A DNA stretch of 64,000 bases from the IMG/VR virus record IMGVR_UViG_3300028920_000001, positions 62,001-126,000 of that record; one strand, given 5' to 3'. Positions 37,638-61,254 of this stretch are shown piece by piece; the first letter of the stretch is position 1, and each line of letters begins with the position of its first letter. The notes under the pieces were generated by a model. It did not search any database. It saw nothing but the letters and a program-made list of their open reading frames with translations, and was not told the origin of the DNA. The position numbers and the translations under genes were made by a program.

Positions 37638-37695
37638 GGTTTTTTCTCCTTGAACGGCCCGAAATTCAGGCAAAAACCCAGATAGCGAAATCTGG
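37638..37695 (-). promoter_or_regulatory. Y-RNA-like module in the Ro60 5' UTR overlapping its Shine-Dalgarno
   Basis: GGUUUUU-GCCUG-AAUUU-CGGGC-CGUUC-AAGGAG-AAAAAACC-AUG. Confidence 0.6.
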
Positions 37696-47780: not shown

Positions 47781-47858
47781 TAGTACGGAGGGCGGGATTC
47801 GAACCCGCACTGTCTAGCATCTCGGGCTAGTGCCTCTGCCTAGTTGGGCTACCTCCGC
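47781..47858 (-). tRNA. tRNA-Leu(GAG), short variable loop
   Basis: CUAGC-CCGAGAU-GCUAG, variable ACAGU. Confidence 0.85.
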
Positions 47859-47872
47859 ATGTAAAGTATGAT

Positions 47873-48397
47873 ATGGACGCCAAAAAATTATTGGTTATGG
47901 AAGAATTGCCTTTTGATGTAATTCCTCGATATGATATTGATCCTGAAATTCCTGCATTCTATCTATCTGAAGACGGAACTCAGATTAAGCAGGCGCTTTA
48001 TAGTGGAGACCAGGGATTTAGAGTCCCGCTGCTTTCAGCCGAAAATCGAAATATTGATAATTTAATATGTGATGTCATTATTACTGCTGCAATGGAAAAT
48101 GAAGAATGGACAGCTTCTTCAGTTGAAGAAGCCATTACATTAATTAAAGAGAAATTAATACTTTTCGATGTTGAATTAGATGCTCTTTTAACTAATTCCA
48201 AACTGAATCTACCAATAACTGAGTCATTCACTCAAGTTGCTTACTACGACGAAATTCCAACTAATGTTATTTATGGATTAGGAGAAAACACATACCTTGG
48301 TGTGTTACCATATCGTCCTGAAGGACTTAATGAATATGGTAAATTTGGTATTGCGGTATTCAATTCAAATGCTATCGTGAAAGTAGTTATCAATTGA
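47873..48397 (+). CDS. hypothetical protein (weak resemblance to capsid-protein C-terminal motifs)
   Basis: EIPTNVIYG...YLGVLPYR...FGIAVFN. Confidence 0.55.
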   Translation: MDAKKLLVMEELPFDVIPRYDIDPEIPAFYLSEDGTQIKQALYSGDQGFRVPLLSAENRNIDNLICDVIITAAMENEEWTASSVEEAITLIKEKLILFDVELDALLTNSKLNLPITESFTQVAYYDEIPTNVIYGLGENTYLGVLPYRPEGLNEYGKFGIAVFNSNAIVKVVIN

Positions 48398-48618
48398 GTT
48401 ATGTCGAAGAAGTCTGGGACTTAGCTTCACAAGTCGCTAATTTCCAAGATGACGAACTGCTTTGGAACACTAGTGACTATGTTTATATTTCAGTTCCTGC
48501 TCGCTTAATACAAAGACTTTGGTGGGCTACACGTTGTGATCTCGATGTTACTAAAACAGGCATTAAACGATCATGGACTTTCCAAGAAGCGATTGTCTAT
48601 GAAGTGATGGGATCGTAG
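48394..48618 (+). CDS. hypothetical protein with C-terminal VMGS tag
   Basis: ends IVYEVMGS*. Confidence 0.65.
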   Translation: MSYVEEVWDLASQVANFQDDELLWNTSDYVYISVPARLIQRLWWATRCDLDVTKTGIKRSWTFQEAIVYEVMGS

Positions 48619-48692
48619 TACCCGTGATAGGATTCGAACCTACACTGTACGGCACCTAAAGCCGTCGCCTCTGCCAGTTGGGCTACACGGGC
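48616..48692 (-). tRNA. tRNA-Leu(UAG), short variable loop
   Basis: ACGGC-UUUAGGU-GCCGU, variable ACAGU. Confidence 0.88.
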
Positions 48693-49013
48693 ATGAAACC
48701 TTCAAAAATCAGAAGAAATTATGGACACATGAAGATTGAAGGCATTCCAATTATAGATCCTGAAATTTTGTCATATATGAATTGCTGTTTTGTTCATCTA
48801 TGTAAAAACAAAACCGTTACGTATTACCAACTGCATGAAAATGGGAAGATTTCATACCAAGCATACTGTGTTGATCATCAATATTATCTTCGAGATGAAC
48901 ACAATAAAATCAGTTATGGTTATTGGATACGAGGCATAACAAGTTCGCGTCAGTATCGAGTTCATAAAGAAAACTGGAATCAAATAATAGTATGTAACAT
49001 AATGAACGTATAG
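48693..49013 (+). CDS. hypothetical protein with variant tag (IMNV)
   Basis: start reassigned to MKPSK outside the tRNA; ends IVCNIMNV*. Confidence 0.6.
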   Translation: MKPSKIRRNYGHMKIEGIPIIDPEILSYMNCCFVHLCKNKTVTYYQLHENGKISYQAYCVDHQYYLRDEHNKISYGYWIRGITSSRQYRVHKENWNQIIVCNIMNV

Positions 49014-49087
49014 TGCTCAGGGAGGGATTCGAACCCACACTGTGTAGTGTTTGAAACTACCGCCTCTGCCAGTTGGGCTACCTGAGC
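49011..49087 (-). tRNA. tRNA-Leu(CAA), short variable loop
   Basis: GUAGU-UUCAAAC-ACUAC, variable ACAGU. Confidence 0.88.
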
Positions 49088-49171
49088 ATAGAGTTTGGTT
49101 ATGACTTGGAAAGCACACTGGAATTATTTAAAATATATTTGAAGTTATAACTTTAATATAGTAAAATTAAT

Positions 49172-49462
49172 ATGAATATGAATCCTCATCAGTTATCCAC
49201 TTCTCTGCGTCACATTGCTAGTAAAATTGAAAATTCGAAGAATCCTCAACGAGATTTGGTAATAGCCGACTTAAAGAAAATTATTGCAGGTATTGATGAT
49301 ACCGTATCTACCCCTATTCGTGTAACAATTAATACTGTAGTTGACATTCCACAAGAACAGCTTGATCATATTACTGATTTTGATTTAGTAAATCTCATAT
49401 TGCAAAAAATTGGAGATAATAAGTATATAGATGATGGAGAAATTGAATTAGAATTTGTTTAG
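49172..49462 (+). CDS. protein with type-B N-terminal leader
   Basis: MNPHQLSTSLRHIASKIENSKNPQRDLVIADL. Confidence 0.7.
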   Translation: MNMNPHQLSTSLRHIASKIENSKNPQRDLVIADLKKIIAGIDDTVSTPIRVTINTVVDIPQEQLDHITDFDLVNLILQKIGDNKYIDDGEIELEFV

Positions 49463-49529
49463 TGCGGATAGCAGGATTCCACTGATTAATTTTTGAAATT
49501 AGTGCCTCTGCCAGTTGGGCTATATCCGC
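49460..49529 (-). pseudogene. tRNA-Leu(CAA) pseudogene with T-arm deletion
   Basis: Leu-type D-arm and CAA loop intact, but + strand reads GCAGGATTCCACTG where siblings read GNNGGATTCGAACCNNCACTG (about 7 nt lost). Confidence 0.75.
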
Positions 49530-49558
49530 TTATAGGTATTATTATTGTAAAATAAAAC

Positions 49559-49771
49559 ATGCCTGAGAATCAACCAGATTTCATATTAAAATTAAATTCA
49601 AAAGATCCTAATGGGGATTTCAATGAAAGAGTCGGGGCTGGATGGTATACTAAATTTGGGGGCATTTCAATCACTCTAAACCCTGGCATTGTATTATCAT
49701 ATGAGACTATTCAGGATTTTTTTCTTATTCTTGCTAAAACTAATCATAAGAAAAGTGATAAAAAGACATGA
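49559..49771 (+). CDS. hypothetical protein
   Basis: ERVGAGW..KFGGISITLNPG. Confidence 0.6.
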   Translation: MPENQPDFILKLNSKDPNGDFNERVGAGWYTKFGGISITLNPGIVLSYETIQDFFLILAKTNHKKSDKKT

Positions 49772-50019
49772 TTTGTGTTAGGATAATCCAAGGTAAGTAT
49801 AAAGGTCATTATGGATATATAGATTTGAAATATATATCCAATAGTGAACATGTAATCGACCTGTGTGATTCCGATGACGAAGAATTTAATGATAGAACAC
49901 CTATTCTTTTAGTTACAAAACAAATTGGTATAAAACCAACTCGAATTATGGAGAGTCCCGATCACTTCAATCTGATTTCTAAAGAAGAATACACTGTTGG
50001 AGTAATAATGACGCTGTAA
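49768..50019 (+). CDS. KOW-like small protein with variant tag (IMTL)
   Basis: VRIIQGKYKGHYG; ends TVGVIMTL*. Confidence 0.6.
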   Translation: MICVRIIQGKYKGHYGYIDLKYISNSEHVIDLCDSDDEEFNDRTPILLVTKQIGIKPTRIMESPDHFNLISKEEYTVGVIMTL

Positions 50020-50027
50020 GGTAGACT

Positions 50028-50240
50028 ATGACCTACGTTAAATTCATTCAAGGTCCGAATCAAGGACATCATGGGGTTGTAGTTAAAAGTCTTGGGACTA
50101 CTTCCCAAGTTCAAATTATGACCAAGTGGGACGGACCGCCACAACGACAATATCATCCAACCGTTACTGAACCAACAACAAATTTCGAATTGGTAGGTGA
50201 AGATGAGTATAAAACAGCAATGTTAAACTGCTTAAGATGA
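50028..50240 (+). CDS. KOW-like small protein
   Basis: VKFIQGPNQGHHGVV. Confidence 0.55.
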   Translation: MTYVKFIQGPNQGHHGVVVKSLGTTSQVQIMTKWDGPPQRQYHPTVTEPTTNFELVGEDEYKTAMLNCLR

Positions 50241-50388
50241 AATTTCACTTTTAATCTTACATTTGAATATGAATGAAGCTCAAAAAAGACGTGTTAATCA
50301 CATCATCATCTTAGGAATCGGGATTGTCCTTGGAATGATGATATCCACACTGCTCCATCATTATGGATTAGCTCCTCTTCAATAGTAT

Positions 50389-50466
50389 TTGTGCGGAGAG
50401 CGGGATTCGAACCCGCACTGGATAGTGTCTGAAACTATTGCCTCTGCCTAGTTGGGCTACCTCCGC
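50389..50466 (-). tRNA. tRNA-Leu(CAG), short variable loop
   Basis: AUAGU-UUCAGAC-ACUAU, variable CCAGU. Confidence 0.88.
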
Positions 50467-50503
50467 ATTATGGACGGCACAAATCTGAACATACGATAAC
50501 CAT

Positions 50504-50633
50504 TAGTGCCCCGAACAGGATTTGAACCTGTAACATCCGGCTTGAATGGCGATAACCCTTATCCTCCGGCCCGAATCGGGCAAAAAATCGGCAAGGATAT
50601 TTTACGGCGCTCTATCCGTTGAGCTATCGGGGC
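50504..50633 (-). ncRNA. tRNA-scaffold / Y-module chimera 2 (130 nt)
   Basis: acceptor GCCCCGA/UCGGGGC, D and T arms canonical; insert AUCCUUGCCGAUUUUUUGCCCG-AUU-CGGGCCGGAGGAUAAGGGUUAUCGCC. Confidence 0.8.
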
Positions 50634-50673
50634 GATAGAACTTTTTGCCTCGAGAAGGCCTCGAGAAAAGTTC

Positions 50674-50748
50674 TGGTGCGGAGAACAAGAATCGAACTTG
50701 TCTACAACGCTATGTCAAAGCGTGCTCATCCCAGATGAGTATCTCCGC
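50674..50748 (-). tRNA. tRNA-Val(GAC)
   Basis: ACGCU-UUGACAU-AGCGU, CCA encoded. Confidence 0.9.
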
Positions 50749-50750
50749 AA

Positions 50751-50880
50751 ACGGGCAAAAAATCGTGAATGGATGTTGAAGGTTGGATTCGAACCAACGA
50801 CCTCCGGATGTTAGTCCGGCGCTCTAACCACTGAGCTACTCGCTCGATTGATGGGCGATAACCCACACACTCCGGCCCGT
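50751..50880 (-). ncRNA. Y-RNA-like RNA carrying an internal degenerate tRNA cloverleaf (130 nt)
   Basis: 5' ACGGGCCGGAGUGUGUGGGUUAUCGCC ... D-arm, CCGGA-CUAACA-UCCGG (6-nt loop), T-arm ... AUCCAUUCACGAUUUUUUGCCCGU 3'; 2-nt spacers to flanking tRNAs. Confidence 0.75.
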
Positions 50881-50882
50881 AT

Positions 50883-50959
50883 TGGTGGAGCGCCTGGGAA
50901 TTGAACCCAGCACAGGTCGCTTATCAGGCGTCCTAGGTCAGACCAGACGCTTACGCTCC
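50883..50959 (-). tRNA. tRNA-Ile(GAU)
   Basis: loop CU-GAU-AA, CCA encoded. Confidence 0.85.
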
Positions 50960-50971
50960 GTTAAAGTTTCT

Positions 50972-51049
50972 TAGTAGGGGAGATAGGATTCGAACCTACA
51001 CTGTAGGGTTTTTAAAACCCTCGCCTCTGCCTAGTTGGGCTACTCCCCC
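50972..51049 (-). tRNA. tRNA-Leu(UAA), short variable loop
   Basis: AGGGU-UUUAAAA-ACCCU, variable ACAGU. Confidence 0.88.
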
Positions 51050-51070
51050 GATCTGTTGTATTATTTAATA

Positions 51071-51433
51071 GTGGATCAAAGATTAGATAAAATCACAATT
51101 CCTACTACCATAGTTGATATGTATGGAGGTGAAACTTGCTTCTTTTCTTTGAATGATATCTATGCCTCTTTTAATGCTCTTCATATACCGAATGCTGCTT
51201 CCTCTAAAAAATTTGGCTTAGTTTGCATTCATAAATTGGATCAAAGTCAATTACAAACAGACATTTTCCATGCTGTGATTCTTCAAATTAAGAAAATTAA
51301 GCGAATTCATTGGATATCGAACGACTACACCCTAATTCAAACTTTTGACTTAGTTAAGAGCCCTATTGAATATTACCGAAAAATCAAAGAATTGAAAGCG
51401 CTCCATTTAGTTCGAAATATAATGGAATCTTAA
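51071..51433 (+). CDS. hypothetical protein with C-terminal IMES tag
   Basis: start reassigned to GTG 51071 (promoter motif 6 nt upstream); ends LVRNIMES*. Confidence 0.6.
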   Translation: MDQRLDKITIPTTIVDMYGGETCFFSLNDIYASFNALHIPNAASSKKFGLVCIHKLDQSQLQTDIFHAVILQIKKIKRIHWISNDYTLIQTFDLVKSPIEYYRKIKELKALHLVRNIMES

Positions 51434-51443
51434 ATCTTAAATC

Positions 51444-51734
51444 CTAAATATCATGAACTTCGTACACGAAAATTTTAGTCAAAAATTCTTCTTCTGATTC
51501 AGCAAAGAAGAACCAATCATAATCAGAATCAGAATCTATATCATCATTATATAATTGTCTATCACGTTTATACTGAAAGATTTTCATTCCATCCCCATAT
51601 TTCTCGAGTTTAGCTTGAGCTAAAGAATTGGAAACTGTAGTCCCTTGATAGACATCAGAAATAGATCTAAGATCATCTAAATTCATCTTATCGAGAACCA
51701 ATACAGCTTCCCATGGACAGGCATCGATCCTCAT
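51444..51734 (-). CDS. hypothetical protein with variant tag (VHDI)
   Basis: ends FVYEVHDI*. Confidence 0.6.
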   Translation of the reverse strand: MRIDACPWEAVLVLDKMNLDDLRSISDVYQGTTVSNSLAQAKLEKYGDGMKIFQYKRDRQLYNDDIDSDSDYDWFFFAESEEEFLTKIFVYEVHDI

Positions 51735-51961
51735 GGATTATCTTTCTTAGTCACGACTTCTACAATTCTTCTTAGTAAATTCTGTTCTTTTAAGTATACT
51801 AATAAATGTTGAAGCTCCCATGGTTCAAGTTTAGTCAAACCAACTTCTTTAATTCGACGTTTGAAATAATCTCGAGTACTTTCCATGGTTATTTGAGTAA
51901 ATCTAGAATCTTGGTCAGTATATCTTTTTATACCTCCTATAACGGATATTATAGATCTCAC
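51731..51961 (-). CDS. hypothetical protein
   Basis: 76-aa ORF. Confidence 0.5.
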   Translation of the reverse strand: MRSIISVIGGIKRYTDQDSRFTQITMESTRDYFKRRIKEVGLTKLEPWELQHLLVYLKEQNLLRRIVEVVTKKDNP

Positions 51962-52136
51962 TCTTAAGATTTTGTTTCGCTATTATCTGATTCATATAAT
52001 CATTACTAGTATTAAGTGAAGGCTCTACTCTTCCTACTCGACGCATGCAACGAACGGCATTCATAAGTTCCTCAGCGTCATCTTCACGCATCGGTTCTTC
52101 TAAAATAACCGTAAACCCTTTGATTCGGTCTGTCAT
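51915..52136 (-). CDS. hypothetical protein
   Basis: MTDRIKGFTVILEEPMREDDAE. Confidence 0.6.
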   Translation of the reverse strand: MTDRIKGFTVILEEPMREDDAEELMNAVRCMRRVGRVEPSLNTSNDYMNQIIAKQNLKSEIYNIRYRRYKKIY

Positions 52137-52369
52137 GATTCCATCACCTGATATACATAAATTACATCCAAAATTTCTTGTTCATTTCTACGTTTCACCA
52201 TTTCTTTGGAAAAATGGAGTGTATGAGTTTCTCCCATCTTATTCCCAAAAGTAATAAGATAAAATGAGTTACCGGTCCCATCATGCTCAAATCCCATTGA
52301 TAAATATTTAATTCCATTCCTGTCTGCGACATCTTTAATCCATCGCCAATTTTTAGGTCCGTTATACAT
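52133..52369 (-). CDS. hypothetical protein with C-terminal VMES tag
   Basis: ends YVYQVMES*. Confidence 0.7.
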   Translation of the reverse strand: MYNGPKNWRWIKDVADRNGIKYLSMGFEHDGTGNSFYLITFGNKMGETHTLHFSKEMVKRRNEQEILDVIYVYQVMES

Positions 52370-52387
52370 TAATAACTCTAGAGCAAT

Positions 52388-52463
52388 TGGTACGGGGCGT
52401 GAGGATCGAACTCACCTTGTTCTCCTTGTAAAAGAGATGCCATCACCAGACGACTCGCCCCGC
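52388..52463 (-). tRNA. tRNA-Val(UAC)
   Basis: loop UU-UAC-AA, CCA encoded. Confidence 0.88.
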
Positions 52464-52693
52464 TCTCTACTTGGTTGAATTACGCCCCCTAAGATTCCTG
52501 GTTAGTTTCTCTTAAATCTTTAAGTTTTGCTTTAATCTCGGTAATCCAACCACAACATTTTATACATACATGATCTTTATGTACAATTCCTTCCCTGTTC
52601 GGTGGTCCGAAAAATAATCCACCTGGTTCCATCAACTCCTTTCCACAGAAATCACAGACCACTTGAATCATAATCAATTGTACAATTATCTTA

Positions 52694-53041
52694 ATGTTGG
52701 AAGAAATCAAAGCTCAGATGGCAACTGTTTCTTCTCGAGAGAAAAGATTAGATATTATTTATGATGTGATCGATGACGCATTGATAGCAGGTAAGTTTAA
52801 TGAAATTAACCAAATGTTTACAGAAATCAAATGTGAGGAATTTGAAGCAACTGAATTGTTAGGATTTCTAACCATCACTTTAATGGCTCATGGCCAATTA
52901 TCCAATCGTGGATGGTTCTATGATCAATGCAAAATTGAATTATTAAAAAGTCGTCCATTAACAGAAGTTAATAAAATGACAAGTGGCTTGGCATTTCCTT
53001 ATCAAGCCCAAACTCAAGCCAAGAAAATTGTTACTAAATAG
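52694..53041 (+). CDS. hypothetical protein with KKIVTK C-terminal tag
   Basis: ends TQAKKIVTK*. Confidence 0.7.
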   Translation: MLEEIKAQMATVSSREKRLDIIYDVIDDALIAGKFNEINQMFTEIKCEEFEATELLGFLTITLMAHGQLSNRGWFYDQCKIELLKSRPLTEVNKMTSGLAFPYQAQTQAKKIVTK

Positions 53042-53113
53042 TCGGAGTGAGAGGAATTGAACCTCCATGATCTCGGTCCCGAACCGAGTGGCTTACCAGT
53101 TGCCTACACTCCG
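53039..53113 (-). tRNA. tRNA-Pro(CGG)
   Basis: CUCGG-UUCGGGA-CCGAG. Confidence 0.9.
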
Positions 53114-53114
53114 G

Positions 53115-53184
53115 CTGGGGTACTAGGACTCGAACCTAGATACTGAGATCCAAAGTCTCAGGTCCTACCGTTGGACGATACCCC
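53115..53184 (-). tRNA. tRNA-Gln(UUG), second copy
   Basis: UGGGGUA/UACCCCA, UGAGA-CUUUGGA-UCUCA. Confidence 0.88.
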
Positions 53185-53187
53185 AAT

Positions 53188-53259
53188 TGGTCGCTACGGA
53201 GGGATCTCGAACCCTCGCCCAAGGCCGTATGAAAGCCCGGTCCTTCCTAGGTCGTAGCG
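53188..53259 (-). tRNA. tRNA-Met/Ile2(CAU) with reduced D-arm
   Basis: CGCUACG/CGUAGCG, loop UU-CAU-AC, CCA encoded; D-arm barely pairs. Confidence 0.7.
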
Positions 53260-53292
53260 GAAGATTCTAGTTCATTTAACGTAATCTTTAAC

Positions 53293-53712
53293 ATGCTTAT
53301 CGAATGGGATAAAATCATTGGTATAAGCTTTAGAAAAAGAGAAGATGGTTATGATTTTATAGTCACTACTGATGAAGCATATGATGCTGCGGACGGTTGG
53401 CATGCAGGTGATGAAGAGCATACAATATTTTTTAAATCCGATTGTACTTGGCAAGATATAAGAATAAGTCTAGATGCCATTAATTATCATTTTCAGAAAG
53501 AAGTTGAAAAACAAATTCGAGCAATTACACGTAAAGTCTTTGATATCATCGGTCCTAATTTCTCTAATGAAGGACATAGACAATTTCATTGTTGGTGGAA
53601 TTGCCTTCATTTTGAAGAATTCGTATTATATTTAACTAATTATGTTAATTATGAAGATGCTTTGGAAATTTTAAATCGAATTTATTTAGTTAAATCAATA
53701 ATGGATAGTTAA
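53293..53712 (+). CDS. hypothetical protein with C-terminal IMDS tag
   Basis: ends LVKSIMDS*. Confidence 0.7.
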   Translation: MLIEWDKIIGISFRKREDGYDFIVTTDEAYDAADGWHAGDEEHTIFFKSDCTWQDIRISLDAINYHFQKEVEKQIRAITRKVFDIIGPNFSNEGHRQFHCWWNCLHFEEFVLYLTNYVNYEDALEILNRIYLVKSIMDS

Positions 53713-54065
53713 GAATTCATAACCTGATAGATAGTCCAACTCGGTGAATTTTCAAAATGTGCTTCATTGATTTCATGAATCTCGAGTCCATCATTAATTG
53801 CACATCCTAATTTATCTTGTCCCTTAGGAGTAGTAATTAATTGAGTTAAGTATTTTTCATTTGATAAATTTAAAATATTACCAAAACGACGACGTTGGAC
53901 TTGAGTAAGTCGTACAAACCAGAAATCGGATTCATTAATAGTAGCCATTCCTAAAAGAAGCGAGTTGCTATCTCGATACCATCGTACATCTTTACCTGTC
54001 ATTAAATGATAATCTCTAGCTTTATTAAGAACTTCACCTAGATCACTACACTGATGTTTGTTCAT
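53709..54065 (-). CDS. hypothetical protein with C-terminal VMNS tag
   Basis: ends TIYQVMNS*. Confidence 0.7.
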   Translation of the reverse strand: MNKHQCSDLGEVLNKARDYHLMTGKDVRWYRDSNSLLLGMATINESDFWFVRLTQVQRRRFGNILNLSNEKYLTQLITTPKGQDKLGCAINDGLEIHEINEAHFENSPSWTIYQVMNS

Positions 54066-54080
54066 ATTTCATTTTACAAT

Positions 54081-54159
54081 TGGTTGCGGGCACGGGGAGT
54101 CGAACCCCGCTGTTACTAGCTCATGAGGCTAGTGTGTAATGCCGTTTCACTCGCCCGCA
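54081..54159 (-). tRNA. tRNA-Met/Ile2(CAU)
   Basis: CUAGC-CUCAUGA-GCUAG, CCA encoded. Confidence 0.88.
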
Positions 54160-54234
54160 TAGTCTCCCCAGCAGGACTCGAACCTGCATAACAAGCTCCG
54201 GAGGCTTGTGCCTTATCCATTAGACGATGAGGAG
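54160..54234 (-). tRNA. tRNA-Arg(CCG)
   Basis: loop CU-CCG-GA. Confidence 0.88.
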
Positions 54235-54251
54235 AATTTACTACCCTAAAA

Positions 54252-54857
54252 CTAGCATTTATTTCTAATAAAACATAAAGGAAAAACAATATCACTCATA
54301 CAACATGGGATCAGTACTGCTAAAAACAAAAACACACTAATTAAAACTAATTCTACAGCATCAAATCTAGTCTGAGTAGCCATGGAAATATGAAATAATG
54401 ATGCCCAAGTACTAAGCAATACATGAATTGTATGAGGAAATTTGGTACTAGGTATAAGAATCCCTAATAGGATTCCAACTAAAGCTAATGGATTAATTAA
54501 CCACCATTTTTCGATGAATCCAATATGATGATGAGCATGAGGCATATTAAGCAATAGCTCTCCTACATACGGAATGATACAATCACTTAATGTGCCAATT
54601 CCAATAGAACCCATATATCCAATTAATATGATATATCCAAATCTAAATTTACTACCAGAATTTAGACAAAAAATTCCAGTAGTAACCCATGCACTAACTA
54701 AAACATGAAGAGGATGTAAAGTCCAAAACGCATTTTCGGAAAATGATCTTGGTAAGTCTAAAACTAAAATCAATGCCATAATGGCAATTCCAGTAAAGAC
54801 TCCAAAACTAGTAAATGGGGAATGAATTTTAAGTTCTTTTATGATAGTAACTAACAT
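54252..54857 (-). CDS. multi-pass membrane protein with conserved-looking His motifs (possible metal-binding/transport)
   Basis: HSPFT, LHPLHVLVSA, TLSDCIIPY, HAHHHIGFIE, HTIHVLLSTWASLFH, PCCMSDIVFP. Confidence 0.65.
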   Translation of the reverse strand: MLVTIIKELKIHSPFTSFGVFTGIAIMALILVLDLPRSFSENAFWTLHPLHVLVSAWVTTGIFCLNSGSKFRFGYIILIGYMGSIGIGTLSDCIIPYVGELLLNMPHAHHHIGFIEKWWLINPLALVGILLGILIPSTKFPHTIHVLLSTWASLFHISMATQTRFDAVELVLISVFLFLAVLIPCCMSDIVFPLCFIRNKC

Positions 54858-54890
54858 ACTAATAAATACAAAAGTAGACTTTAAACTTAC

Positions 54891-54966
54891 GGAGCCCCTA
54901 GCAGGAGTCGAACCCGCATTAACCTGGTTCCGTAGACCAGTGCATTCTCCGTTATGCTATAGGGGC
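54891..54966 (-). tRNA. tRNA-Arg(ACG)
   Basis: CUGGU-CUACGGA-ACCAG. Confidence 0.88.
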
Positions 54967-54993
54967 AAAAATACTGATGTGCTGTTCTAATCC

Positions 54994-55065
54994 GGAGCCC
55001 CCACTAGGAGTCGAACCTAGAACGCGAAGCTTAGAACACTCTGCTGGGTATCCGTCCCTGAGGGC
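54994..55065 (-). tRNA. tRNA-Arg(UCU)
   Basis: loop GU-UCU-AA; weak anticodon stem. Confidence 0.75.
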
Positions 55066-55117
55066 CTATCGTGTGATTATTCGTCTTTTCCACTCTCTGC
55101 ATGCTTTACAATTAGGA

Positions 55118-55963
55118 TCATAACCTTGATGTCTTGAACAAATTCCTGCCATCTCGTTTCTTTCTGCCTGTTAGTTCATATAATGAAGTGCCATTTCTCA
55201 TTAGCCAACAATCAATTGAAATCCAAGTTCTTCCGTCAGTTGACTGACAACTTTTCTTATCCCGATTAACAATAGGGAGTCTTCCAGTTTGAACAAAGAA
55301 ATCTTTGATCCATGATTTAATTAACGGGATTGTAAATGATGGATATGAACGAGTCTTTAGACCAAGCTTCTCTTTCATATAGATTCCTGTACTCATTTTA
55401 TGATTTTTACGAATCCATTCACCAATAGTTCTCCAGTCCCATCCATTAGTAAATTCGTTGCCTTTATGCGGAACTTTTTGGTATTTTGCATAATAGAGTT
55501 TAATCCAACTATCAACAGATGCTTTGGTTAGTGGAACATGTGGTCCTTTAAAACCAATAAACTCTGGTGTTACCCTCTTAGTTTCTATCCTCTGTTTAAT
55601 TGGCTTTCTTCTATCAAATTTTTTATCTAGAGCTCGAGCTTTCTTTAAAGTTATGAGTCTCAAGTTATCTCTGCAGAAATTTAACTTATTCCCATCTAGA
55701 TGATAAATAACGTATCCTCTTTTCCCTTTCTTTCCTTTAATGAAATACTTCAGATTATGACATGGTTCTCCAATACTATGTAGAGAATGGACCTGTTTGC
55801 CTTTTTTCCATACCCACTTATATTCATTAACTCGATCCCAGTCCTTTTCATCAATTAATGCAAAATTTCCATTTCCCACTTCTATCCATTGTTTACCAGG
55901 CTTTTTTCGTGGTTTCGGATGTCCGTAGGTAGATGACGGTTTTGGCACATTATTATTGTACAT
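55118..55963 (-). mobile_element. HNH-related homing endonuclease homolog with repeated C-terminal DNA-binding-like units
   Basis: FALIDEKDWDRVNEYKW...YHLDGNKLNFCRDNL; repeated 'I.SWIK.(Y/F)...G..P...W..I..W.R'. Confidence 0.65.
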
Positions 55964-55970
55964 TAAAATA

Positions 55971-56192
55971 ATGGCTTATCCTATAGGAACTCATGTTAAA
56001 ATTAAAGAACATCATCATAGTATTGATAATGATGCCTGGTATGGAACTATTGAAAATTATGATCATGATACCACACTTTATGAAGTGAAAATTGATCAAG
56101 ATGAAATTAAATGGAATAGACTTGTATTTGAAAATGAATTCGTTATTGTTTCTCCAGATGAGCTTTTATTATTAGAAGTTATGAAATCTTAG
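55971..56192 (+). CDS. small SH3/KOW-like protein with C-terminal VMKS tag
   Basis: MAYPIGTHVKI...GTI...YEV; ends LLLEVMKS*. Confidence 0.65.
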   Translation: MAYPIGTHVKIKEHHHSIDNDAWYGTIENYDHDTTLYEVKIDQDEIKWNRLVFENEFVIVSPDELLLLEVMKS

Positions 56193-56262
56193 AGTCCTAG
56201 GTGAGATTCGAACTCACTTCCTGTGGGTTGCAATCACAGTCCCGCATCCCGCGAACTAGGAC
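56190..56262 (-). tRNA. tRNA-Cys(GCA)
   Basis: loop UU-GCA-AC, U73. Confidence 0.85.
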
Positions 56263-56340
56263 AATAAGGATAGGTCTGCAGCCTCATCCTTAATCAGTTA
56301 TTCGGAGGAGTGGCGTCCCACTCATATTAAAGTGAATAAC

Positions 56341-56416
56341 TGGAGCGGCCGACGAGGATCGAACTCGTACTTCTAGCTTGGCAAGCTAGCTTGCTACCAT
56401 TAAACAACACGGCCGC
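56341..56416 (-). tRNA. tRNA-Gly(GCC)
   Basis: CUAGC-UUGCCAA-GCUAG, UCCA end. Confidence 0.9.
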
Positions 56417-56418
56417 AA

Positions 56419-56668
56419 ACGACTCGTTCCAATTGGTTTAGCCAACCGGGCCCTGGAACAAGTCGAATCGAAGAATTTTAAACAATCCGATAAGCACAAG
56501 CTCGGATCACAAGGACTGTTATAGACTGTGCCTTTCCATAACACCTCATCAAAATTCTTCAGAGCGACAGGAGGGTAACGCTCCCTCACATCTTAATAGA
56601 CTCGTCACTTTCCGAATCAGTCGCTAGACAACTACCGGTTTCCCGATTCAGAGTCGGGTCCGGCTCGT
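56419..56668 (-). ncRNA. unassigned approximately 250-nt structured RNA between two tRNA-Gly genes
   Basis: stems CCCGA/UCGGG, GCGAC/GUCGC, GAGGG/CCCUC, GAAGAAUUUU/AAAAUUCUUC, AUCCGA/UCGGAU, GUUCCA/UGGAAC. Confidence 0.55.
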
Positions 56669-56744
56669 TAGAGCAGGATACGAGATTCGAACTCGTGATT
56701 TTCTGGTTGGAAGCCAGACGCCTTACCAACTTGGCTAATCCTGC
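56669..56744 (-). tRNA. tRNA-Gly(UCC)
   Basis: UCUGG-CUUCCAA-CCAGA. Confidence 0.9.
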
Positions 56745-56801
56745 AAATGACCCGAAGGTCAAGTCAACTCAGATTTCCCATCCTAAGGGCGGGCCTGATG
56801 T

Positions 56802-56875
56802 TGGAGCCAGCCTAGAGAATCGAACTCTAATCGCACCCGTACCAGGGGTGTGCTCTACCATTGAGCTAGGCTGGC
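56802..56875 (-). tRNA. tRNA-Thr(GGU)
   Basis: CACCC-CUGGUAC-GGGUG, CCA encoded. Confidence 0.9.
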
Positions 56876-56877
56876 AA

Positions 56878-56942
56878 ACGGGCAAAAAATTGACGGAAGG
56901 CAGTTTCGTTTACAAGGCGATAACCTTCAATCTCCGGCCCGT
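56878..56942 (-). ncRNA. Y-RNA-like RNA (65 nt)
   Basis: ACGGGCCGGAGAUUGAAGGUUAUCGCC...CCUUCCGUCAAUUUUUUGCCCGU; 2 nt upstream of tRNA-Thr. Confidence 0.75.
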
Positions 56943-56965
56943 AAATCTTTTTGTAGAGTCAAAAC

Positions 56966-57373
56966 ATGGTTGACGATGAACTTGATCAATTATGGGAACA
57001 AATTCCTTGGTCTCCAGGATCATCGCATATTTGTGATGATTCTAAAGAATGCAATGATTTAATAGAGGAACAACTTAAATTCTTAGAGGAGGATCCATTT
57101 AAAGATCCATCAAATCCTCATAATGACATTGTTACGTCGGAAGCAAGAGTCTACAAGTCATTAGGGAGGCATAAAATTGAAAATGAACAAAATCATGAAG
57201 GTTCGTTTCGTGTATTATACCCAAAAAAACGAACTATATTAGTAGATCTATATGGCTTAGCTTATGAACAAGGTCGTTTTAGTACTCACTTAATAACATT
57301 GAGAAAGCAAGATGCAGAGCAACAGGTAGAAACTCGCAAGAAAGCTATTATACTTAGTGTGATGGAGTCATAA
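56966..57373 (+). CDS. hypothetical protein with C-terminal VMES tag
   Basis: ends IILSVMES*. Confidence 0.7.
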   Translation: MVDDELDQLWEQIPWSPGSSHICDDSKECNDLIEEQLKFLEEDPFKDPSNPHNDIVTSEARVYKSLGRHKIENEQNHEGSFRVLYPKKRTILVDLYGLAYEQGRFSTHLITLRKQDAEQQVETRKKAIILSVMES

Positions 57374-57580
57374 ATGGCCGTTTATCCTTATCATTGCACT
57401 AATAAAAAATGCGGCCATGAATGGGAAGCTGAACACGGGATGAACGAAGACCCACTTAAGAAATGCCCTAAGTGTAAAAAGAAAACAGCTAAAAGAGACA
57501 TTGCTGGATCAAATTTTGTTCTTAAAGGTCCTGGTTGGGCTGATGATGGTTACAGCCAAAAATTTAACCCTGAGACTTAG
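57374..57580 (+). CDS. FmdB-family zinc-ribbon protein
   Basis: MAVYPYHC..KCGHEWE...M.EDPL..CPKC...FVLKG.GW. Confidence 0.85.
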   Translation: MAVYPYHCTNKKCGHEWEAEHGMNEDPLKKCPKCKKKTAKRDIAGSNFVLKGPGWADDGYSQKFNPET

Positions 57581-57809
57581 TAGCTTCTAATTCTTTTTCC
57601 ATTTCTTCTAAAGCATCATAATATCGAGGATCTTCAACTAAATGGTCTCTTACAATCTCTAAGGCAATATTGGCATCATCAGTATGCTCTAATTCAACTA
57701 AAATCCCTTTACCTAAAGCACAGGGATCAAATTGATTAATATCGCATTCATCAGCTTTCCCACCCGGAAGTTGATCAGTGATCCTTAAAGCTAACTTAGA
57801 TAAATCCAT
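57564..57809 (-). CDS. DUF5661-like phage protein with type-A N-terminal leader
   Basis: LPGGKAD...FDP.AL.KGI.VELEHT.D..IA.EI..DHL.EDP.YY..L. Confidence 0.7.
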   Translation of the reverse strand: MDLSKLALRITDQLPGGKADECDINQFDPCALGKGILVELEHTDDANIALEIVRDHLVEDPRYYDALEEMEKELEATKSQG

Positions 57810-57832
57810 ATTTTAAATTCAAATTAAAACTA

Positions 57833-57906
57833 TAGTGGACCAGCAGGGAATCGAACCCTGATGCGACTGCTTGCAGAGCAGTGCCCTGAACCCATCAGAC
57901 CAGCCC
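57833..57906 (-). tRNA. tRNA-Ala(UGC)
   Basis: G3:U70, loop UC-UGC-AA. Confidence 0.85.
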
Positions 57907-57991
57907 TTGGGTGAGATGCTCGCGCGCAGCTTTTTGTAGGCCCCGACAAGATCTGTCGTTTCTCACCTTGCCTTCGGAGTCTCGAGCCTCC

Positions 57992-58064
57992 TAGTGGACC
58001 TGCAGAGAGTTGAACTCTGATGCAACTGTGTGCGACACAGTACCCCGACCCGCCGGACAAGCCC
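57992..58064 (-). tRNA. tRNA-Ala(CGC)
   Basis: G3:U70, ACUGU-GUCGCAC-ACAGU. Confidence 0.8.
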
Positions 58065-58065
58065 T

Positions 58066-58142
58066 TAGTGGAACCGGAGGGATTCAAACCCTCGACCTCT
58101 TGTCTGCCAGACAAGCGCTCTCTCGGACTGAGCTACGATCCC
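58066..58142 (-). tRNA. tRNA-Ala(GGC)
   Basis: G3:U70, CUUGU-CUGGCAG-ACAAG. Confidence 0.88.
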
Positions 58143-58143
58143 G

Positions 58144-58217
58144 TAGCGGGCTGTCATGGGATCGAACCATGAGCAGTGGACTTGGAAACCACTATGTTGC
58201 CATTACACCAACAGCCC
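58144..58217 (-). tRNA. tRNA-Trp(CCA)
   Basis: GUGGU-UUCCAAG-UCCAC, G73. Confidence 0.88.
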
Positions 58218-58936
58218 TAAGCCGCTTTCTTAAAGAATTTTCTGGAATTCTTTAATTTCTCTTTGTCTGTTTCATCCCAAATCTTTTTCTTACGCTTCAT
58301 GAAAATGGTTGCGTCTTTGTACATCCATTCACAGAGAAGCATTGAATCGTACTGATTAAATATCAACTTCTGAGCTTTTCCATTAGCAATCTTTTTGTTT
58401 CCCACAGGAATAAACTCACGGAGCTTCTGTTTAAAATCTTCTAAGAAATTTCCGGTGTCATTCCCGGCAGTGAAAGAAGTTCCTAAAGCAGAAATACGTC
58501 TCCCGTGTCGATTATTGTAATGCTTGTAATATATAGACCCATCCCCATCGAAATAGCCACGTACAAAATGATGAAAATACTTGTTAGGAATTTTGGGATA
58601 AGAGTATTTAAATGACTTCTTTCTAGTACCTCCAAAACTTATTAATTTATTGACCATATGATTACTTCCAAATCTAACAAATCCATACGACGATCCCCTA
58701 CCATAGGATTTTGGGTTAGAACTAATGATTTGAATCTTTTTCTTTAGTTTCATTAAATCAATTATCATTTCAAGATGATCAACATCTTTCCCAGAAAAAC
58801 TTATTCTAGCATGAGACCTCTTCCCATTCTTACGATGTCTGATGTATATACTTCCATCAGCCCACCAGAATCCAAACACGTAGGCTGAAGCTTCATTCCA
58901 TTGATCAAAGAATTTTTCGTTAACTCTCCAATTCAC
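58217..58936 (-). mobile_element. LAGLIDADG homing endonuclease, free-standing, abutting tRNA-Trp
   Basis: AYVFGFWWADGSI, HFVRGYFDGDGSI. Confidence 0.88.
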
Positions 58937-59172
58937 AATTTACTTTATCATCGTTATTCTAATAGTAATTTTCAAAGAAATCGCCCTCAGCCTCAGACCC
59001 ATGCAAGTCAATAATTGACTTGTGTATTCTTATTTATGAACTCTCGGTTATTCCGATATTTACTAAAGTATCGTTGGTTCCGGTTTTTGGTAGATTACGG
59101 ATTTAATGTAAAAATTGGCTGCCCTAATTGTGGAAAAGGGAGTCTTGAATCAAATCCTGGTCGTACTCACCA

Positions 59173-59448
59173 TTGTGGAGCTTGTGGATATCTAAGGTAA
59201 TTTATTTTATGTGGGTGATCCAATGTGTTAGATCCAAAATGTTTGCTTCTAAACTCAGTGGAGTTTTACCTACCTTAAGTCAAATTGATGATGCTTTATT
59301 TTTTGAAACTCGAATTGCAGCTGATGTTAAATTAACTGGTTATTTCAATGATTGGCTAACTCGCTATCCAAGTCATAATTTGAAGGATTTTACCTATACA
59401 GTAGTGCGTGCAGAAGATTTTATAGTGAGCAATGTTATGGAGTCATGA
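59173..59448 (+). CDS. hypothetical protein with C-terminal VMES tag
   Basis: ends IVSNVMES*; start probably MWVIQ. Confidence 0.65.
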   Translation: MWSLWISKVIYFMWVIQCVRSKMFASKLSGVLPTLSQIDDALFFETRIAADVKLTGYFNDWLTRYPSHNLKDFTYTVVRAEDFIVSNVMES

Positions 59449-59459
59449 CTCCATAACAT
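59432..59459. repeat. perfect 28-bp palindrome at the junction of two convergent VMES-tagged genes
   Basis: ATGTTATGGAGTCA|TGACTCCATAACAT. Confidence 0.95.
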
Positions 59460-59718
59460 CTGAAATAATTTCATTTTCCAATTGATCTATTTGCTCAATT
59501 AGCGCTTTACCTTTACGTTCTATTCTTTTATCAATCGGGCTAAAAAGCATTGCTAAAAAGGCCAGATGTACCCAAACGTCTGCAGGTTTATCCATAAATA
59601 AATAGTCATACATTCCAAGAGTTGCCATGGTGAGAAAAGTAGCACAACACCCGAAATTTAAGAAACGAATAGCAACTAAAATCCAAAATAATATATTAGC
59701 TCGGCGCAAAGACTTCAT
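59443..59718 (-). CDS. 2-TM protein with C-terminal VMES tag
   Basis: ends IISDVMES*. Confidence 0.7.
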   Translation of the reverse strand: MKSLRRANILFWILVAIRFLNFGCCATFLTMATLGMYDYLFMDKPADVWVHLAFLAMLFSPIDKRIERKGKALIEQIDQLENEIISDVMES

Positions 59719-59930
59719 GATCTCATGACTTTGCCGGTAATAATTTCAAACGCTTTCTCACCAACTTCCTCCAAACACTGGGGACAAAATCTTACTTCAA
59801 TAGTGCTTAAACCGTGTCGCATTCGTTCAGCACTTTTAACAACAAATATGTAGGTGGACGATTCATCCAGACAAAAATTACAAAATCCAGCGTCCCTCTG
59901 ACTTACTTTTACAATAGATATATTTTTCAT
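59715..59930 (-). CDS. zinc-binding small protein with VMRS tag
   Basis: CNFC..CPQC; ends ITGKVMRS*. Confidence 0.7.
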   Translation of the reverse strand: MKNISIVKVSQRDAGFCNFCLDESSTYIFVVKSAERMRHGLSTIEVRFCPQCLEEVGEKAFEIITGKVMRS

Positions 59931-60310
59931 GATTCCATGATTTCCTTAACTGTCAAGAAATACCGCGATTCCCTACGGATTTTCATTATCAATCTCAGAA
60001 ATTCCCACAATTCAACTTCTTTCACAAAATTAACTTGTGAATGAGTCGTATAAATGTTCATAGTAGTAATATCAACTGGAAGAAGTGGTCTCTTCACAAT
60101 CACTACAGCTAAAGTTCCATCAGCTAGTTTATGAACCAAAATTGGCCCGACTCTTTTTCTAAAAGCGTAATTATGTAAATAAACTAAGCCACTACTATCA
60201 ATTAATATATCTGCATAATGACAAAAACAACATTCTCCATTTTGGAGAGTGCTAACTTGCTTATCATATTCAAATAAGATACTAGTAGTGTAACCCTCAG
60301 GTTGGCCCAT
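59927..60310 (-). CDS. hypothetical protein with C-terminal IMES tag
   Basis: ends TVKEIMES*. Confidence 0.7.
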   Translation of the reverse strand: MGQPEGYTTSILFEYDKQVSTLQNGECCFCHYADILIDSSGLVYLHNYAFRKRVGPILVHKLADGTLAVVIVKRPLLPVDITTMNIYTTHSQVNFVKEVELWEFLRLIMKIRRESRYFLTVKEIMES

Positions 60311-60353
60311 AAATGTATTTTACAATGTGCCTAGTTGATAAAATTATGTTTAT

Positions 60354-60929
60354 TTAGGATTCATCACTATGTTCTCCAGTTAGTTTATCAACCCCAAGTT
60401 CCACACCAGTTCTTTGTTCCCAATTTGAGTACCATTCACATCTTCGAGATGAAGTAGGAACTGCAGACATCAGTCTACTAATTTCTCCGTCCCGATCTTC
60501 AAAAAATCCCCATCCCAACCAACTCAGCCAATGACAGAATGGATGAGCTGCATCCCAGTGCACTTTATTAACAATAAGTGCGTATCCTTCTTTGTCTTTC
60601 CAAATTCCAAACCATGGATTCCAATCCTTACCTCCATAATAAAGAACAAGATCCCGAAGAATCATGAGTTCAAATTTTGCATTTTTGAGTTTAGGAACAA
60701 TAGCAAGTTTCAAGACTCCAGAACCACGTTTAAATTCTGGTAGAACTGGCTTTACAGGTTCCGGTACCTGAACAATTCTAGTCGGAATAGGAATTAATTC
60801 AAAAGGAACTGGTTGAATATCAGCTGTAGGAGCAGGTGTTGTAATAGGCTCGAGTAATTTCATAGGCTCCTGTGGAAGTGCATCATTACACCCTAAACTA
60901 ATTAATACTAAACTGATGAAATATCTCAA
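60354..60929 (-). CDS. exported/lipoprotein-like hypothetical protein
   Basis: MRYFISLVLISLGC signal, Pro-rich linker. Confidence 0.6.
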   Translation of the reverse strand: MRYFISLVLISLGCNDALPQEPMKLLEPITTPAPTADIQPVPFELIPIPTRIVQVPEPVKPVLPEFKRGSGVLKLAIVPKLKNAKFELMILRDLVLYYGGKDWNPWFGIWKDKEGYALIVNKVHWDAAHPFCHWLSWLGWGFFEDRDGEISRLMSAVPTSSRRCEWYSNWEQRTGVELGVDKLTGEHSDES

Positions 60930-61238: not shown

Positions 61239-61254
61239 ACGCGTCCGGCCCATA

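What the first reader, a model, noticed from the sequence alone, without database searches (positions are those of the whole stretch)
47781..51049. A complete tRNA-Leu set (GAG, UAG, CAA, CAG, UAA) without the class II variable arm
Seen: all five have a 5-nt variable loop (ACAGU x4, CCAGU), are about 77-78 nt, and keep Leu-type D-loops and A73. The four neighbouring tRNA-Ser genes retain long arms. Established: bacterial tRNA-Leu is class II, although bacterial LeuRS relies mainly on A73 and tertiary structure. Inference: a lineage-wide switch to class I, perhaps to escape a host nuclease or defence that recognises class II tRNA-Leu, or to suit a phage-encoded synthetase.
Basis: partly seen in the sequence, partly recalled or inferred. 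Interest (0 to 1): 0.6.

Follow-up and report, generated by a model that had tools for sequence, protein, structure and literature searches.

The report
Short-arm leucine tRNAs in huge phage
A 427-kb phage from marine sediment carries five real leucine tRNA genes that lack the usual long extra arm, but this short form is a widespread, already documented tRNA-Leu type in phages, tRNA arrays and actinobacteria, not a peculiarity of this lineage.

Summary
The core observation holds. Five tRNA genes on the minus strand (47783-51049) carry anticodons GAG, UAG, CAA, CAG and UAA. Each has a 5-nt variable loop (ACAGU x4, CCAGU), a Leu-type D arm and A73.

The "four neighbouring long-arm tRNA-Ser genes" do not exist. 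The complete 426,960-bp genome has no tRNA-Ser, Tyr or Cys. The long tRNA-like neighbours are tRNA/Y-RNA chimeras that accompany a phage Ro60 gene.

The set is not purely class I. A decayed sixth copy lies at 49460-49530, and a class II tRNA-Leu(UAA) with a group I intron lies outside the window.

It is not a lineage-wide switch. The nearest relative (LR745208.1) has the same five anticodons, all class II. The phage encodes no LeuRS.

The five genes belong to a conserved short-arm tRNA-Leu family:
- over 100 IMG/VR contigs and over 100 bacterial genomes carry it;
- cultured phages of Escherichia, Vibrio, Pseudomonas, Bacillus, Synechococcus and actinobacteria carry it;
- about a quarter of phage tRNA-Leu genes in a Leu-neutral sample are short, while Ser and Tyr keep the arm.

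The prototype, Streptomyces coelicolor tRNALeu(CAA), is leucylated by its LeuRS (Fan 2019).

Verdict: a new member of a known kind, most likely charged by host LeuRS. Escape from defences that read the long arm remains untested.

The parts
47783..47858 (-). class I tRNA-Leu(GAG), variable loop ACAGU, A73, 3' trailer CUA
   Evidence: ARAGORN; Rfam 53.6 bits; sequence
48618..48692 (-). class I tRNA-Leu(UAG), variable loop ACAGU, A73
   Evidence: ARAGORN; Rfam 55.6 bits
49013..49087 (-). class I tRNA-Leu(CAA), variable loop ACAGU, A73
   Evidence: ARAGORN; Rfam 54.6 bits
49460..49530 (-). decayed class I tRNA-Leu(CAA) copy. It has the same D arm and variable loop UCAGU, but the 5' strand of the T stem and part of the T loop are deleted.
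   Evidence: read from the sequence; 59-72% identity to the five intact genes; not called by ARAGORN or Rfam
50391..50466 (-). class I tRNA-Leu(CAG), variable loop CCAGU, A73, 3' trailer CAA
   Evidence: ARAGORN; Rfam 53.0 bits; 85.5% identical to the GAG gene
50974..51049 (-). class I tRNA-Leu(UAA), variable loop ACAGU, A73
   Evidence: ARAGORN; Rfam 55.9 bits

Best explanation
What they are: the five genes are functional type I (short-variable-loop) tRNA-Leu isoacceptors that together read all six leucine codons.

Family: they belong to a sequence-conserved short-arm tRNA-Leu family. Its features are U8, A9, D arm GCCCAAYUGGCAGAGGC, A15 paired with U48, a 5-nt loop NCAGU, and A73. The family circulates among phages, horizontally transferred bacterial tRNA arrays and Actinomycetota chromosomes.

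Origin (inferred): this phage's set arose by taking up such a gene, followed by duplication and anticodon shifts. It did not arise by deleting the arm from the class II set seen in its nearest relative.

How it works (inferred):
- The phage has no LeuRS and no CCA-adding enzyme, so the transcripts are trimmed, given CCA and leucylated by host enzymes.
- LeuRS reads A73, U8-A14, A15-U48 and the G18G19/T-loop elbow, and does not need the arm. SerRS and bacterial TyrRS do need it, which would explain why only Leu tRNAs appear in the short form.
- The tRNAs boost decoding of a genome in which Leu is 7.8% of codons and UUA is the commonest Leu codon.

Why the short form is favoured in mobile elements is not settled.

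Shown here: gene structure, family membership, covariation, distribution, and absence of a phage LeuRS.
Inferred: charging by host LeuRS, use in translation, and origin by duplication.
For: Structure: two independent callers agree.

Selection on the fold:
- 61 family members align with invariant U8, A14, A15, G19, A21, A35, G53, U54, C56, A58 and A73, and U48 in at least 90%.
- The class I cloverleaf is 98.4% paired. 19 of 20 pairs show compensatory changes, and 0 of 500 shuffles reach this.

Distribution:
- A scan with the D-arm motif gave 113 of 113 matched viral tRNAs and 109 of 109 matched bacterial tRNAs as short tRNA-Leu.
- In a sample of IMG/VR tRNA loci chosen without reference to Leu, the counts were Leu 13 short to 39 long, Ser 1 to 47 and Tyr 3 to 22.
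- In cultured phages wV8 (Felix O1-like, E. coli), VH1_2019 (KVP40 species), P59, vB_PseuGesM_254 and S-CREM1, the tRNA-Leu genes in the fetched 5-6 kb tRNA regions are 73-79 nt and sit beside 84-93-nt Ser and Tyr genes.
- A Corynebacterium chromosomal tRNA-Leu(CAA) shares the D arm, the ACAGU loop and the T arm.

Charging:
- S. coelicolor type I tRNALeu(CAA) with a 5-nt loop is leucylated by its single LeuRS (PMC6614811).
- E. coli tRNALeu without the arm stays active (PMC9976931).
- No class Ia synthetase domains and no PolyA_pol domain were found in the complete genome.

Origin:
- Within the set, GAG and CAG are 85.5% identical, CAA and CAG 82.9%, and UAG and UAA 78.9%.
- The relative's class II genes have G9 and G13 D arms, unlike the A9 and C13 family signature seen here.

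Demand: codon use was computed.
Against: - No expression, processing or charging data exist for this phage. Only DNA runs hold it.
- The host is unknown (marine sediment metagenome), so the competence of its LeuRS is unknown.
- E. coli LeuRS could not charge the S. coelicolor type I tRNALeu(CAA) (PMC6614811), so tolerance of the short form is not universal.
- The genes lie antisense between small plus-strand ORFs, with no clear promoters of their own.
- One copy has already decayed, so selection on every copy is not absolute.
Confidence: 0.72

Rival explanations
1. Defence evasion. The short form is selected in phages and mobile tRNA arrays because toxins that use the long variable arm as a handle (DUF1814 nucleotidyltransferases such as MenT3, MenT1 and AbiEii) cannot grip it. 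The phage's own Leu decoders would then survive abortive-infection attacks. Ser and Tyr cannot follow, because their synthetases need the arm.
For: - MenT3 loses its long poly-C extension activity when the long variable loop is deleted, and gains it when the loop is grafted on (PMC11541572).
- AbiEii, an abortive-infection toxin, appears to prefer class II tRNAs (preprint 10.64898/2026.01.19.700257).
- About 25% of phage tRNA-Leu genes are short. No short tRNA-Leu was found in 5,426 E. coli genomes, although E. coli phage wV8 has three.
- This phage's 37-tRNA set has no Ser or Tyr tRNA at all.
Against: - No toxin known to target tRNA-Leu through its arm has been shown to restrict phage.
- MenT3 prefers Ser and discriminates against Leu arms.
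- Actinobacterial chromosomes use the short form as a housekeeping tRNA.
- This phage keeps a class II Leu(UAA), and its relative keeps five class II Leu genes.
Confidence: 0.15
2. Neutral streamlining. The arm is dispensable for LeuRS, so deletion-biased and size-constrained phage tRNA genes lose it, and the short form persists with no specific advantage.
For: - The arm is dispensable for E. coli and S. coelicolor LeuRS.
- Only the isotype whose synthetase tolerates loss is found in the short form.
Against: - Members from hosts of at least five phyla share one specific D-arm, variable-loop and T-arm signature. That points to one spreading lineage under purifying selection, not repeated random deletions.
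- Saving about 10 nt is trivial for a 427-kb genome.
Confidence: 0.1
3. They are not leucine tRNAs in function. They are either charged with another amino acid (recoding of Leu codons) or act as uncharged decoys or sponges.
For: - Charging was not measured.
- LeuRS acceptance of type I tRNA-Leu is species-dependent.
- The same tRNA region holds non-translational tRNA mimics, the Y-RNA chimeras.
Against: - All known bacterial Leu identity elements are kept and invariant across the family: A73, U8-A14, A15-U48 and G18G19.
- There is no G3:U70 and no long arm to invite AlaRS or SerRS.
- The anticodon set is exactly the five needed for six Leu codons.
- The prototype of the family is leucylated.
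- Normal-looking long ORFs use all six Leu codons.
Confidence: 0.03

Closest known systems
Streptomyces coelicolor type I tRNALeu(CAA) (Fan et al. 2019, NAR, PMC6614811)
   Same: It is a bacterial-world tRNA-Leu with a 5-nt variable loop, a Leu-type D arm, the U8-A14 pair and A73. [quoted passage not shown] Actinobacterial chromosomal members share the exact D-arm, ACAGU-loop and T-arm core with the phage genes.
   Different: There it is a single essential chromosomal isoacceptor. Here a phage carries five isoacceptors covering all Leu codons, with no encoded CCA and with an unknown host LeuRS. In S. coelicolor A73 was not an identity element and C74 mattered; whether that applies here is unknown.
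Short-variable-loop tRNALeu(UAG) in horizontally acquired mycobacterial tRNA gene clusters (Behra et al. 2019, PMC6582537); short tRNA-Leu genes annotated in cultured phages (Felix O1-like wV8, KVP40-like VH1_2019, Bacillus P59, cluster C mycobacteriophages)
   Same: The gene type and context are the same: short tRNA-Leu inside mobile tRNA arrays, next to long-arm Ser and Tyr genes and HNH endonuclease genes.
   Different: Those reports mention it in passing, or only as an annotation of one to three isoacceptors. Here the full five-anticodon set is present, plus a pseudogene and a class II intron-bearing copy.
Animal mitochondrial type I tRNA-Leu
   Same: It lacks the long arm and uses A73 and A14 for leucylation.
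   Different: Mitochondrial tRNAs are structurally degenerate and have a dedicated LeuRS. The phage tRNAs keep canonical D and T loops (G18G19, UUCGAAU) and the Levitt pair A15-U48.
Canonical bacterial and phage class II tRNA-Leu (for example the five genes of relative LR745208.1)
   Same: The five-anticodon set, the A73 discriminator, the D-loop pattern AAYUGGYAGA and the 3-bp D stem are shared.
   Different: The variable arm is 13-19 nt instead of 5 nt, and the D arm has G9 and G13 instead of A9 and C13.

Membership tests
Type I (short-arm) tRNA-Leu family | Variable region of 4-5 nt between anticodon stem and T stem | tested here: met
   ACAGU x4 and CCAGU x1
Type I (short-arm) tRNA-Leu family | Leucine anticodon in a 7-nt loop with U33 and A35 | tested here: met
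   GAG, UAG, CAA, CAG and UAA; A35 is invariant in alignment A1
Type I (short-arm) tRNA-Leu family | Shared core signature: U8, A9, D arm GCCCAAYUGGCAGAGGC, U48, T loop UUCGAAU, A73 | tested here: met
   The exact D-arm motif is present in all five genes. Every matched tRNA was a short tRNA-Leu: 113 of 113 viral and 109 of 109 bacterial.
Type I (short-arm) tRNA-Leu family | Cloverleaf maintained by compensatory change | tested here: met
   98.4% of cells paired; 19 of 20 pairs covary; 0 of 500 shuffles reach this
Type I (short-arm) tRNA-Leu family | Aminoacylation with leucine by LeuRS | not testable with these tools
   Shown only for the S. coelicolor member (PMC6614811). The host of this phage is unknown.
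Canonical class II tRNA-Leu | Long variable arm (more than 10 nt, stem-loop) | tested here: not met
   The five window genes have 5-nt loops. Only the gene outside the window at G000:194717-195065 has a long arm.
Phage tRNA with cognate phage synthetase pair | LeuRS gene in the phage genome | tested here: not met
   PF00133, PF13603 and PF08264 gave 0 matches in the complete 426,960-bp record, while the controls matched in 14 of 14 genomes
   ARAGORN (with and without introns) and Rfam find no tRNA-Ser in the genome, apart from one intron-mode call on a Y-RNA chimera

The most novel reading that the evidence does not exclude
Short-arm tRNA-Leu is an architecture adapted to mobile elements. Phages and transferable tRNA arrays keep it because it cannot be gripped by host toxins that use the class II arm as a handle (MenT/AbiEii-type nucleotidyltransferases or unknown nucleases). 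Leu would be the only class II isotype able to make this escape, because only LeuRS ignores the arm. On this reading, this phage's lack of any Ser or Tyr tRNA and its five short Leu genes are one strategy.
Probability: 0.15. Interest if true: 0.75.

Novelty: new member of a known kind. Interest (0 to 1): 0.4.

Why it matters
A 2023 review still states that tRNA-Leu carries the long arm everywhere except animal mitochondria (PMC9976931). The data here show that the short form is common in phages and has one conserved signature across hosts of several phyla. About a quarter of phage tRNA-Leu genes are short in a sample chosen without reference to Leu. The short form also occurs in phages of hosts, such as E. 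coli, whose own genomes have none.

This points to two cheap experiments on cultured systems (Felix O1-like, KVP40-like, P59 or cluster C mycobacteriophages). Can host LeuRS charge these tRNAs? Are they spared by toxins that depend on the arm? For this particular window the finding is an ordinary member of that family.

Tried and rejected
- Phage LeuRS: three Pfam domains found nothing in the complete genome. Rejected.
- Phage CCA-adding enzyme: PF01743 found nothing.
- Close relatives in the cultured-phage collection: megablast of 8 kb found no match.
- Relatives through the orphan ORF between two Leu genes: none found.
- ORFs from 235 fetched viral loci against the genome: only distant matches, 25-56% identity with one short stretch at 71%.
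- D-arm motif in the nearest relative LR745208.1: two mismatched hits that are not tRNAs. Its Leu genes are class II.
- My own idea that E. coli phages lack short tRNA-Leu because E. coli LeuRS failed on the Streptomyces tRNA. A second blastn rejected it: it found 29 Escherichia and 26 Salmonella phage records, and one checked record, wV8, has three genes of 77-79 nt. E. coli genomes themselves gave no match.
- Inter-tRNA ORFs: no Pfam or PHROG family.
- Promoter and terminator scan: uninformative in this AT-rich stretch.
- Rfam at a permissive threshold for Y RNA: only one weak hit, to the nematode Y-RNA homologue family (24.9 bits, E 0.08), and none in 50400-61500.
- Ten literature searches: no paper treats phage short-arm tRNA-Leu as a topic. 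They found only the Streptomyces study, a passing remark on a mycobacterial cluster and a descriptive cyanobacterial survey.
- Not used: read laying (only DNA contigs hold the stretch), protein folds and the large protein searches. No alternative genetic code was invoked.
Full report
OBSERVATION. ARAGORN finds 24 tRNA genes and a tmRNA in the window, all on the minus strand. Five of them carry leucine anticodons: 47783-47858 (GAG), 48618-48692 (UAG), 49013-49087 (CAA), 50391-50466 (CAG) and 50974-51049 (UAA). Rfam's tRNA model finds the same five at 53-56 bits. The drawn cloverleaves and the sequence show the following for each gene:
- a 7-bp acceptor stem, with G1-U72 in three of them;
- U8 and A9;
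- a 3-bp D stem with the Leu-type D arm GCCCAACU(A)GGCAGAGGC;
- a 5-bp anticodon stem and a 7-nt loop;
- a 5-nt variable loop (ACAGU four times, CCAGU in the CAG gene);
- T loop UUCGAAU and A73.
CCA is not encoded; the 3' ends read ACUA or ACAA.

The window is bases 62001-126000 of a 426,960-bp IMG/VR virus record with direct terminal repeats, rated 100% complete. That whole genome has 37 tRNA genes and no Ser, Tyr or Cys tRNA at all.

TWO QUALIFICATIONS TO 'COMPLETE CLASS I SET'.
- A sixth copy lies at 49460-49530. It has the same D arm, a CAA anticodon loop and variable loop UCAGU, but has lost half of its T arm and is a pseudogene.
- Outside the window, G000:194717-195065 is a canonical class II tRNA-Leu(UAA). 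It has D arm GUGGCGGAAUGGCAUACGC and a variable region of about 15 nt. A group I intron interrupts it at the anticodon (Rfam RF00028, 65 bits).

THE GENES BELONG TO A LARGE FAMILY.
All 113 tRNAs carrying the motif are tRNA-Leu shorter than 80 nt.
- The same scan over one genome per bacterial species also hit the limit, at 120 loci. All 109 motif-bearing tRNAs are short tRNA-Leu.
- Eighty of those bacterial loci hold a solitary gene, mostly with UAA or CAA anticodons and, among the listed record titles, mostly in Actinomycetota. The rest are tRNA arrays in Microcoleus, Planctomycetota, Myxococcota, Acidobacteriota and others.
- To avoid selecting on Leu, I drew a second IMG/VR sample with a generic D-arm motif. 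Among 667 tRNAs, Leu was 13 short to 39 long, Ser 1 to 47 and Tyr 3 to 22.
- Cultured phages carry the short form as well. Escherichia phage wV8 (Felix O1-like) has three tRNA-Leu genes of 77-79 nt. Vibrio phage VH1_2019 (KVP40 species) has two of 77 nt. Bacillus phage P59, Pseudomonas phage vB_PseuGesM_254 and Synechococcus phage S-CREM1 have genes of 73-78 nt. In all of them the Ser and Tyr genes alongside are 84-93 nt.
- Many Streptomyces, Mycobacterium and Gordonia phages also match.
- None of 5,426 complete E. coli genomes matches.

THE FOLD IS UNDER SELECTION. An alignment of 61 members (5 from this phage, 32 viral, 24 bacterial) has invariant U8, A14, A15, G19, A21, A35, G53, U54, C56, A58 and A73, and U48 in at least 90% of rows. 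On the class I cloverleaf, 98.4% of cells pair and 19 of 20 pairs show changes on both sides. No shuffle out of 500, and no slid register, comes close. The conserved positions include the elements known to matter for bacterial leucylation: A73, U8-A14, A15-U48, G18G19 and the T loop (PMC9976931; PMC6614811).

NOT A LINEAGE-WIDE SWITCH AND NOT A PRIVATE SYNTHETASE.
- The large terminase (G000:290850-292799) is closest, at 44% identity, to LR745208.1, an uncultured 485-kb phage. The next hit is an Acidobacteriota phage at 28.5%.
- LR745208.1 has 36 tRNA matches. They include the same five Leu anticodons as 83-89-nt class II genes in one cluster, and four class II tRNA-Ser genes.
- Its Leu D arms carry G9 and G13. 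The window's genes carry the family signature A9 and C13. The window's set is therefore better explained by uptake of a family member followed by duplication and anticodon shifts. Within the set, GAG and CAG are 85.5% identical, CAA and CAG 82.9%, and UAG and UAA 78.9%. Local deletion of the arm fits less well.
- The complete genome has no match to the class Ia synthetase core, the LeuRS-specific domain or the anticodon-binding domain, while all 14 control genomes match. It also has no PolyA_pol-type CCA-adding enzyme. Host enzymes must do the processing and charging.

WHAT IS KNOWN.
- Fan et al. 2019 (PMC6614811) described a type I tRNALeu(CAA) with a 5-nt loop in Streptomyces coelicolor. Its single LeuRS charges it. 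The length of the loop matters but its sequence does not. The leucine-specific domain of the enzyme decides whether a LeuRS accepts it. E. coli LeuRS did not accept that tRNA.
- Behra et al. 2019 remarked that the tRNALeu(UAG) of a transferred mycobacterial tRNA cluster has a short variable loop (PMC6582537).
- A cyanobacterial survey listed 5-nt loops among tRNA-Leu genes without comment (PMC6933170).
- Work on MenT3 implies that only three of the five M. tuberculosis tRNA-Leu have the long loop (PMC11541572).
- A 2023 review still says the long arm is universal outside animal mitochondria.
- I found no paper that treats the phage distribution as a subject. The library does not hold most subscription-journal papers, so this is not proof that none exists.

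MECHANISM. The most likely reading (confidence about 0.7) is that these are working leucine tRNAs. They would be transcribed from the phage, trimmed and given CCA by host enzymes, and leucylated by host LeuRS through the acceptor end and the D/T elbow. They would then be used to translate a 40% G+C genome in which Leu is 7.8% of codons and UUA is 36% of Leu codons. The fact that only Leu is found in the short form fits established knowledge: SerRS and bacterial TyrRS need the arm, and LeuRS does not.

Why mobile elements favour the short form is open.
- Evasion of toxins that depend on the arm is attractive. MenT3 needs the arm and AbiEii seems to prefer long-arm tRNAs. This is untested, however, and MenT3 actually discriminates against Leu arms.
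- Neutral streamlining is weakened by the single conserved signature shared across phyla.

SIDE FINDINGS. Its 5' strand matches the Y RNA Ro60-binding consensus; that match is my recollection. It is supported by one weak Rfam hit to the nematode Y-RNA homologue family at 34106-34182 and by a Ro60 gene (TROVE plus vWA domains) at 35892-37673. Y RNAs with tRNA-like domains next to Ro60 are known in bacteria and mycobacteriophages (PMC4201824). The other items are listed under Noticed in passing.

LIMITS. There are no RNA data and the host is unknown (marine sediment metagenome). The closest relative is distant. Notebook entry 4 contains a slip: where it says the relative's D arms have A9/G13, read G9/G13.

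Noticed in passing
window 35892-37673 (-), 34106-34182 (-), about 56880-56945 (-), 50752-50882 (-), 33978-34105 (-), 50506-50633 (-), 61257-61354 (-), 61167-61250 (-); also G000:137496-137682: The phage encodes a Ro60 orthologue (TROVE plus vWA domains) and at least six Y-RNA-like Ro60-binding stems (CGGGCCGGAG..GGGUUAUCG paired with UUUUGCCCG) scattered through the tRNA region. They come in three layouts: stand-alone Y RNAs, a stem enclosing a tRNA-like domain (YrlA-like), and a stem closed by a loop and embedded in the anticodon arm of an otherwise normal-ended tRNA-like RNA. The embedded layout may be a new topology of tRNA/Y-RNA chimera.
   Followed up: partly
G000:194717-195065 (+), outside the window: Class II tRNA-Leu(UAA) interrupted at the anticodon by a group I intron (Rfam RF00028, 65 bits). 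From memory, this is the arrangement typical of cyanobacteria and plastids. It is redundant with the class I UAA gene in the window.
   Followed up: partly
G000:196791-196887 (+), outside the window: A 97-nt tRNA with anticodon UAU (Ile). Its acceptor stem is identical to that of the class I tRNA-Leu(UAA). Its long variable arm has the loop CUGAUAA, which copies the anticodon loop of the phage tRNA-Ile(GAU). This may be an anticodon-arm mimic placed in the variable arm.
   Followed up: no
whole genome G000: The 37-tRNA repertoire lacks Ser, Tyr and Cys tRNAs entirely. The relative LR745208.1 has four class II tRNA-Ser genes.
   Followed up: partly
window 18541-18615 (-): A class I tRNA with anticodon UCA, which ARAGORN labels SeC. 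It is a possible opal suppressor. Long ORFs read normally under table 11, so there is no sign of genome-wide recoding.
   Followed up: no
window 13832-14185 (-): Phage-encoded tmRNA (Rfam 106.5 bits) with tag peptide ANDNASLAIAA.
   Followed up: no
window 47873-50240 (+): Seven small orphan ORFs with no Pfam or PHROG match tile the spaces between the minus-strand Leu genes. At least two of their stop codons coincide with the first base of a tRNA gene (48618 and 49013), TAG being the complement of the tRNA trailer CUA. GC skew turns positive over 48-50 kb. The region looks like tRNA genes interleaved antisense with a gene cassette.
   Followed up: partly
window 63069-63995 (-), 1169-2137 (-), 3859-5049 (-), 20045-21466 (+), 5955-7142 (-), 27747-28871 (-): Cell-like genes in the window: EF-Tu (the listed ORF lacks about the first 85 positions of the GTP-binding domain), RuvB, a sigma-70 family factor, adenylosuccinate lyase, and a saccharopine-dehydrogenase-like gene plus an Orn/DAP/Arg decarboxylase-like gene (a possible polyamine pair).
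   Followed up: no
L152, L178, L182 (Streptomyces genomes): The D-arm motif there sits in 5' fragments of a short tRNA-Leu that are followed by unrelated sequence. This is as expected for the duplicated tRNA ends left at integration sites of mobile elements.
   Followed up: no
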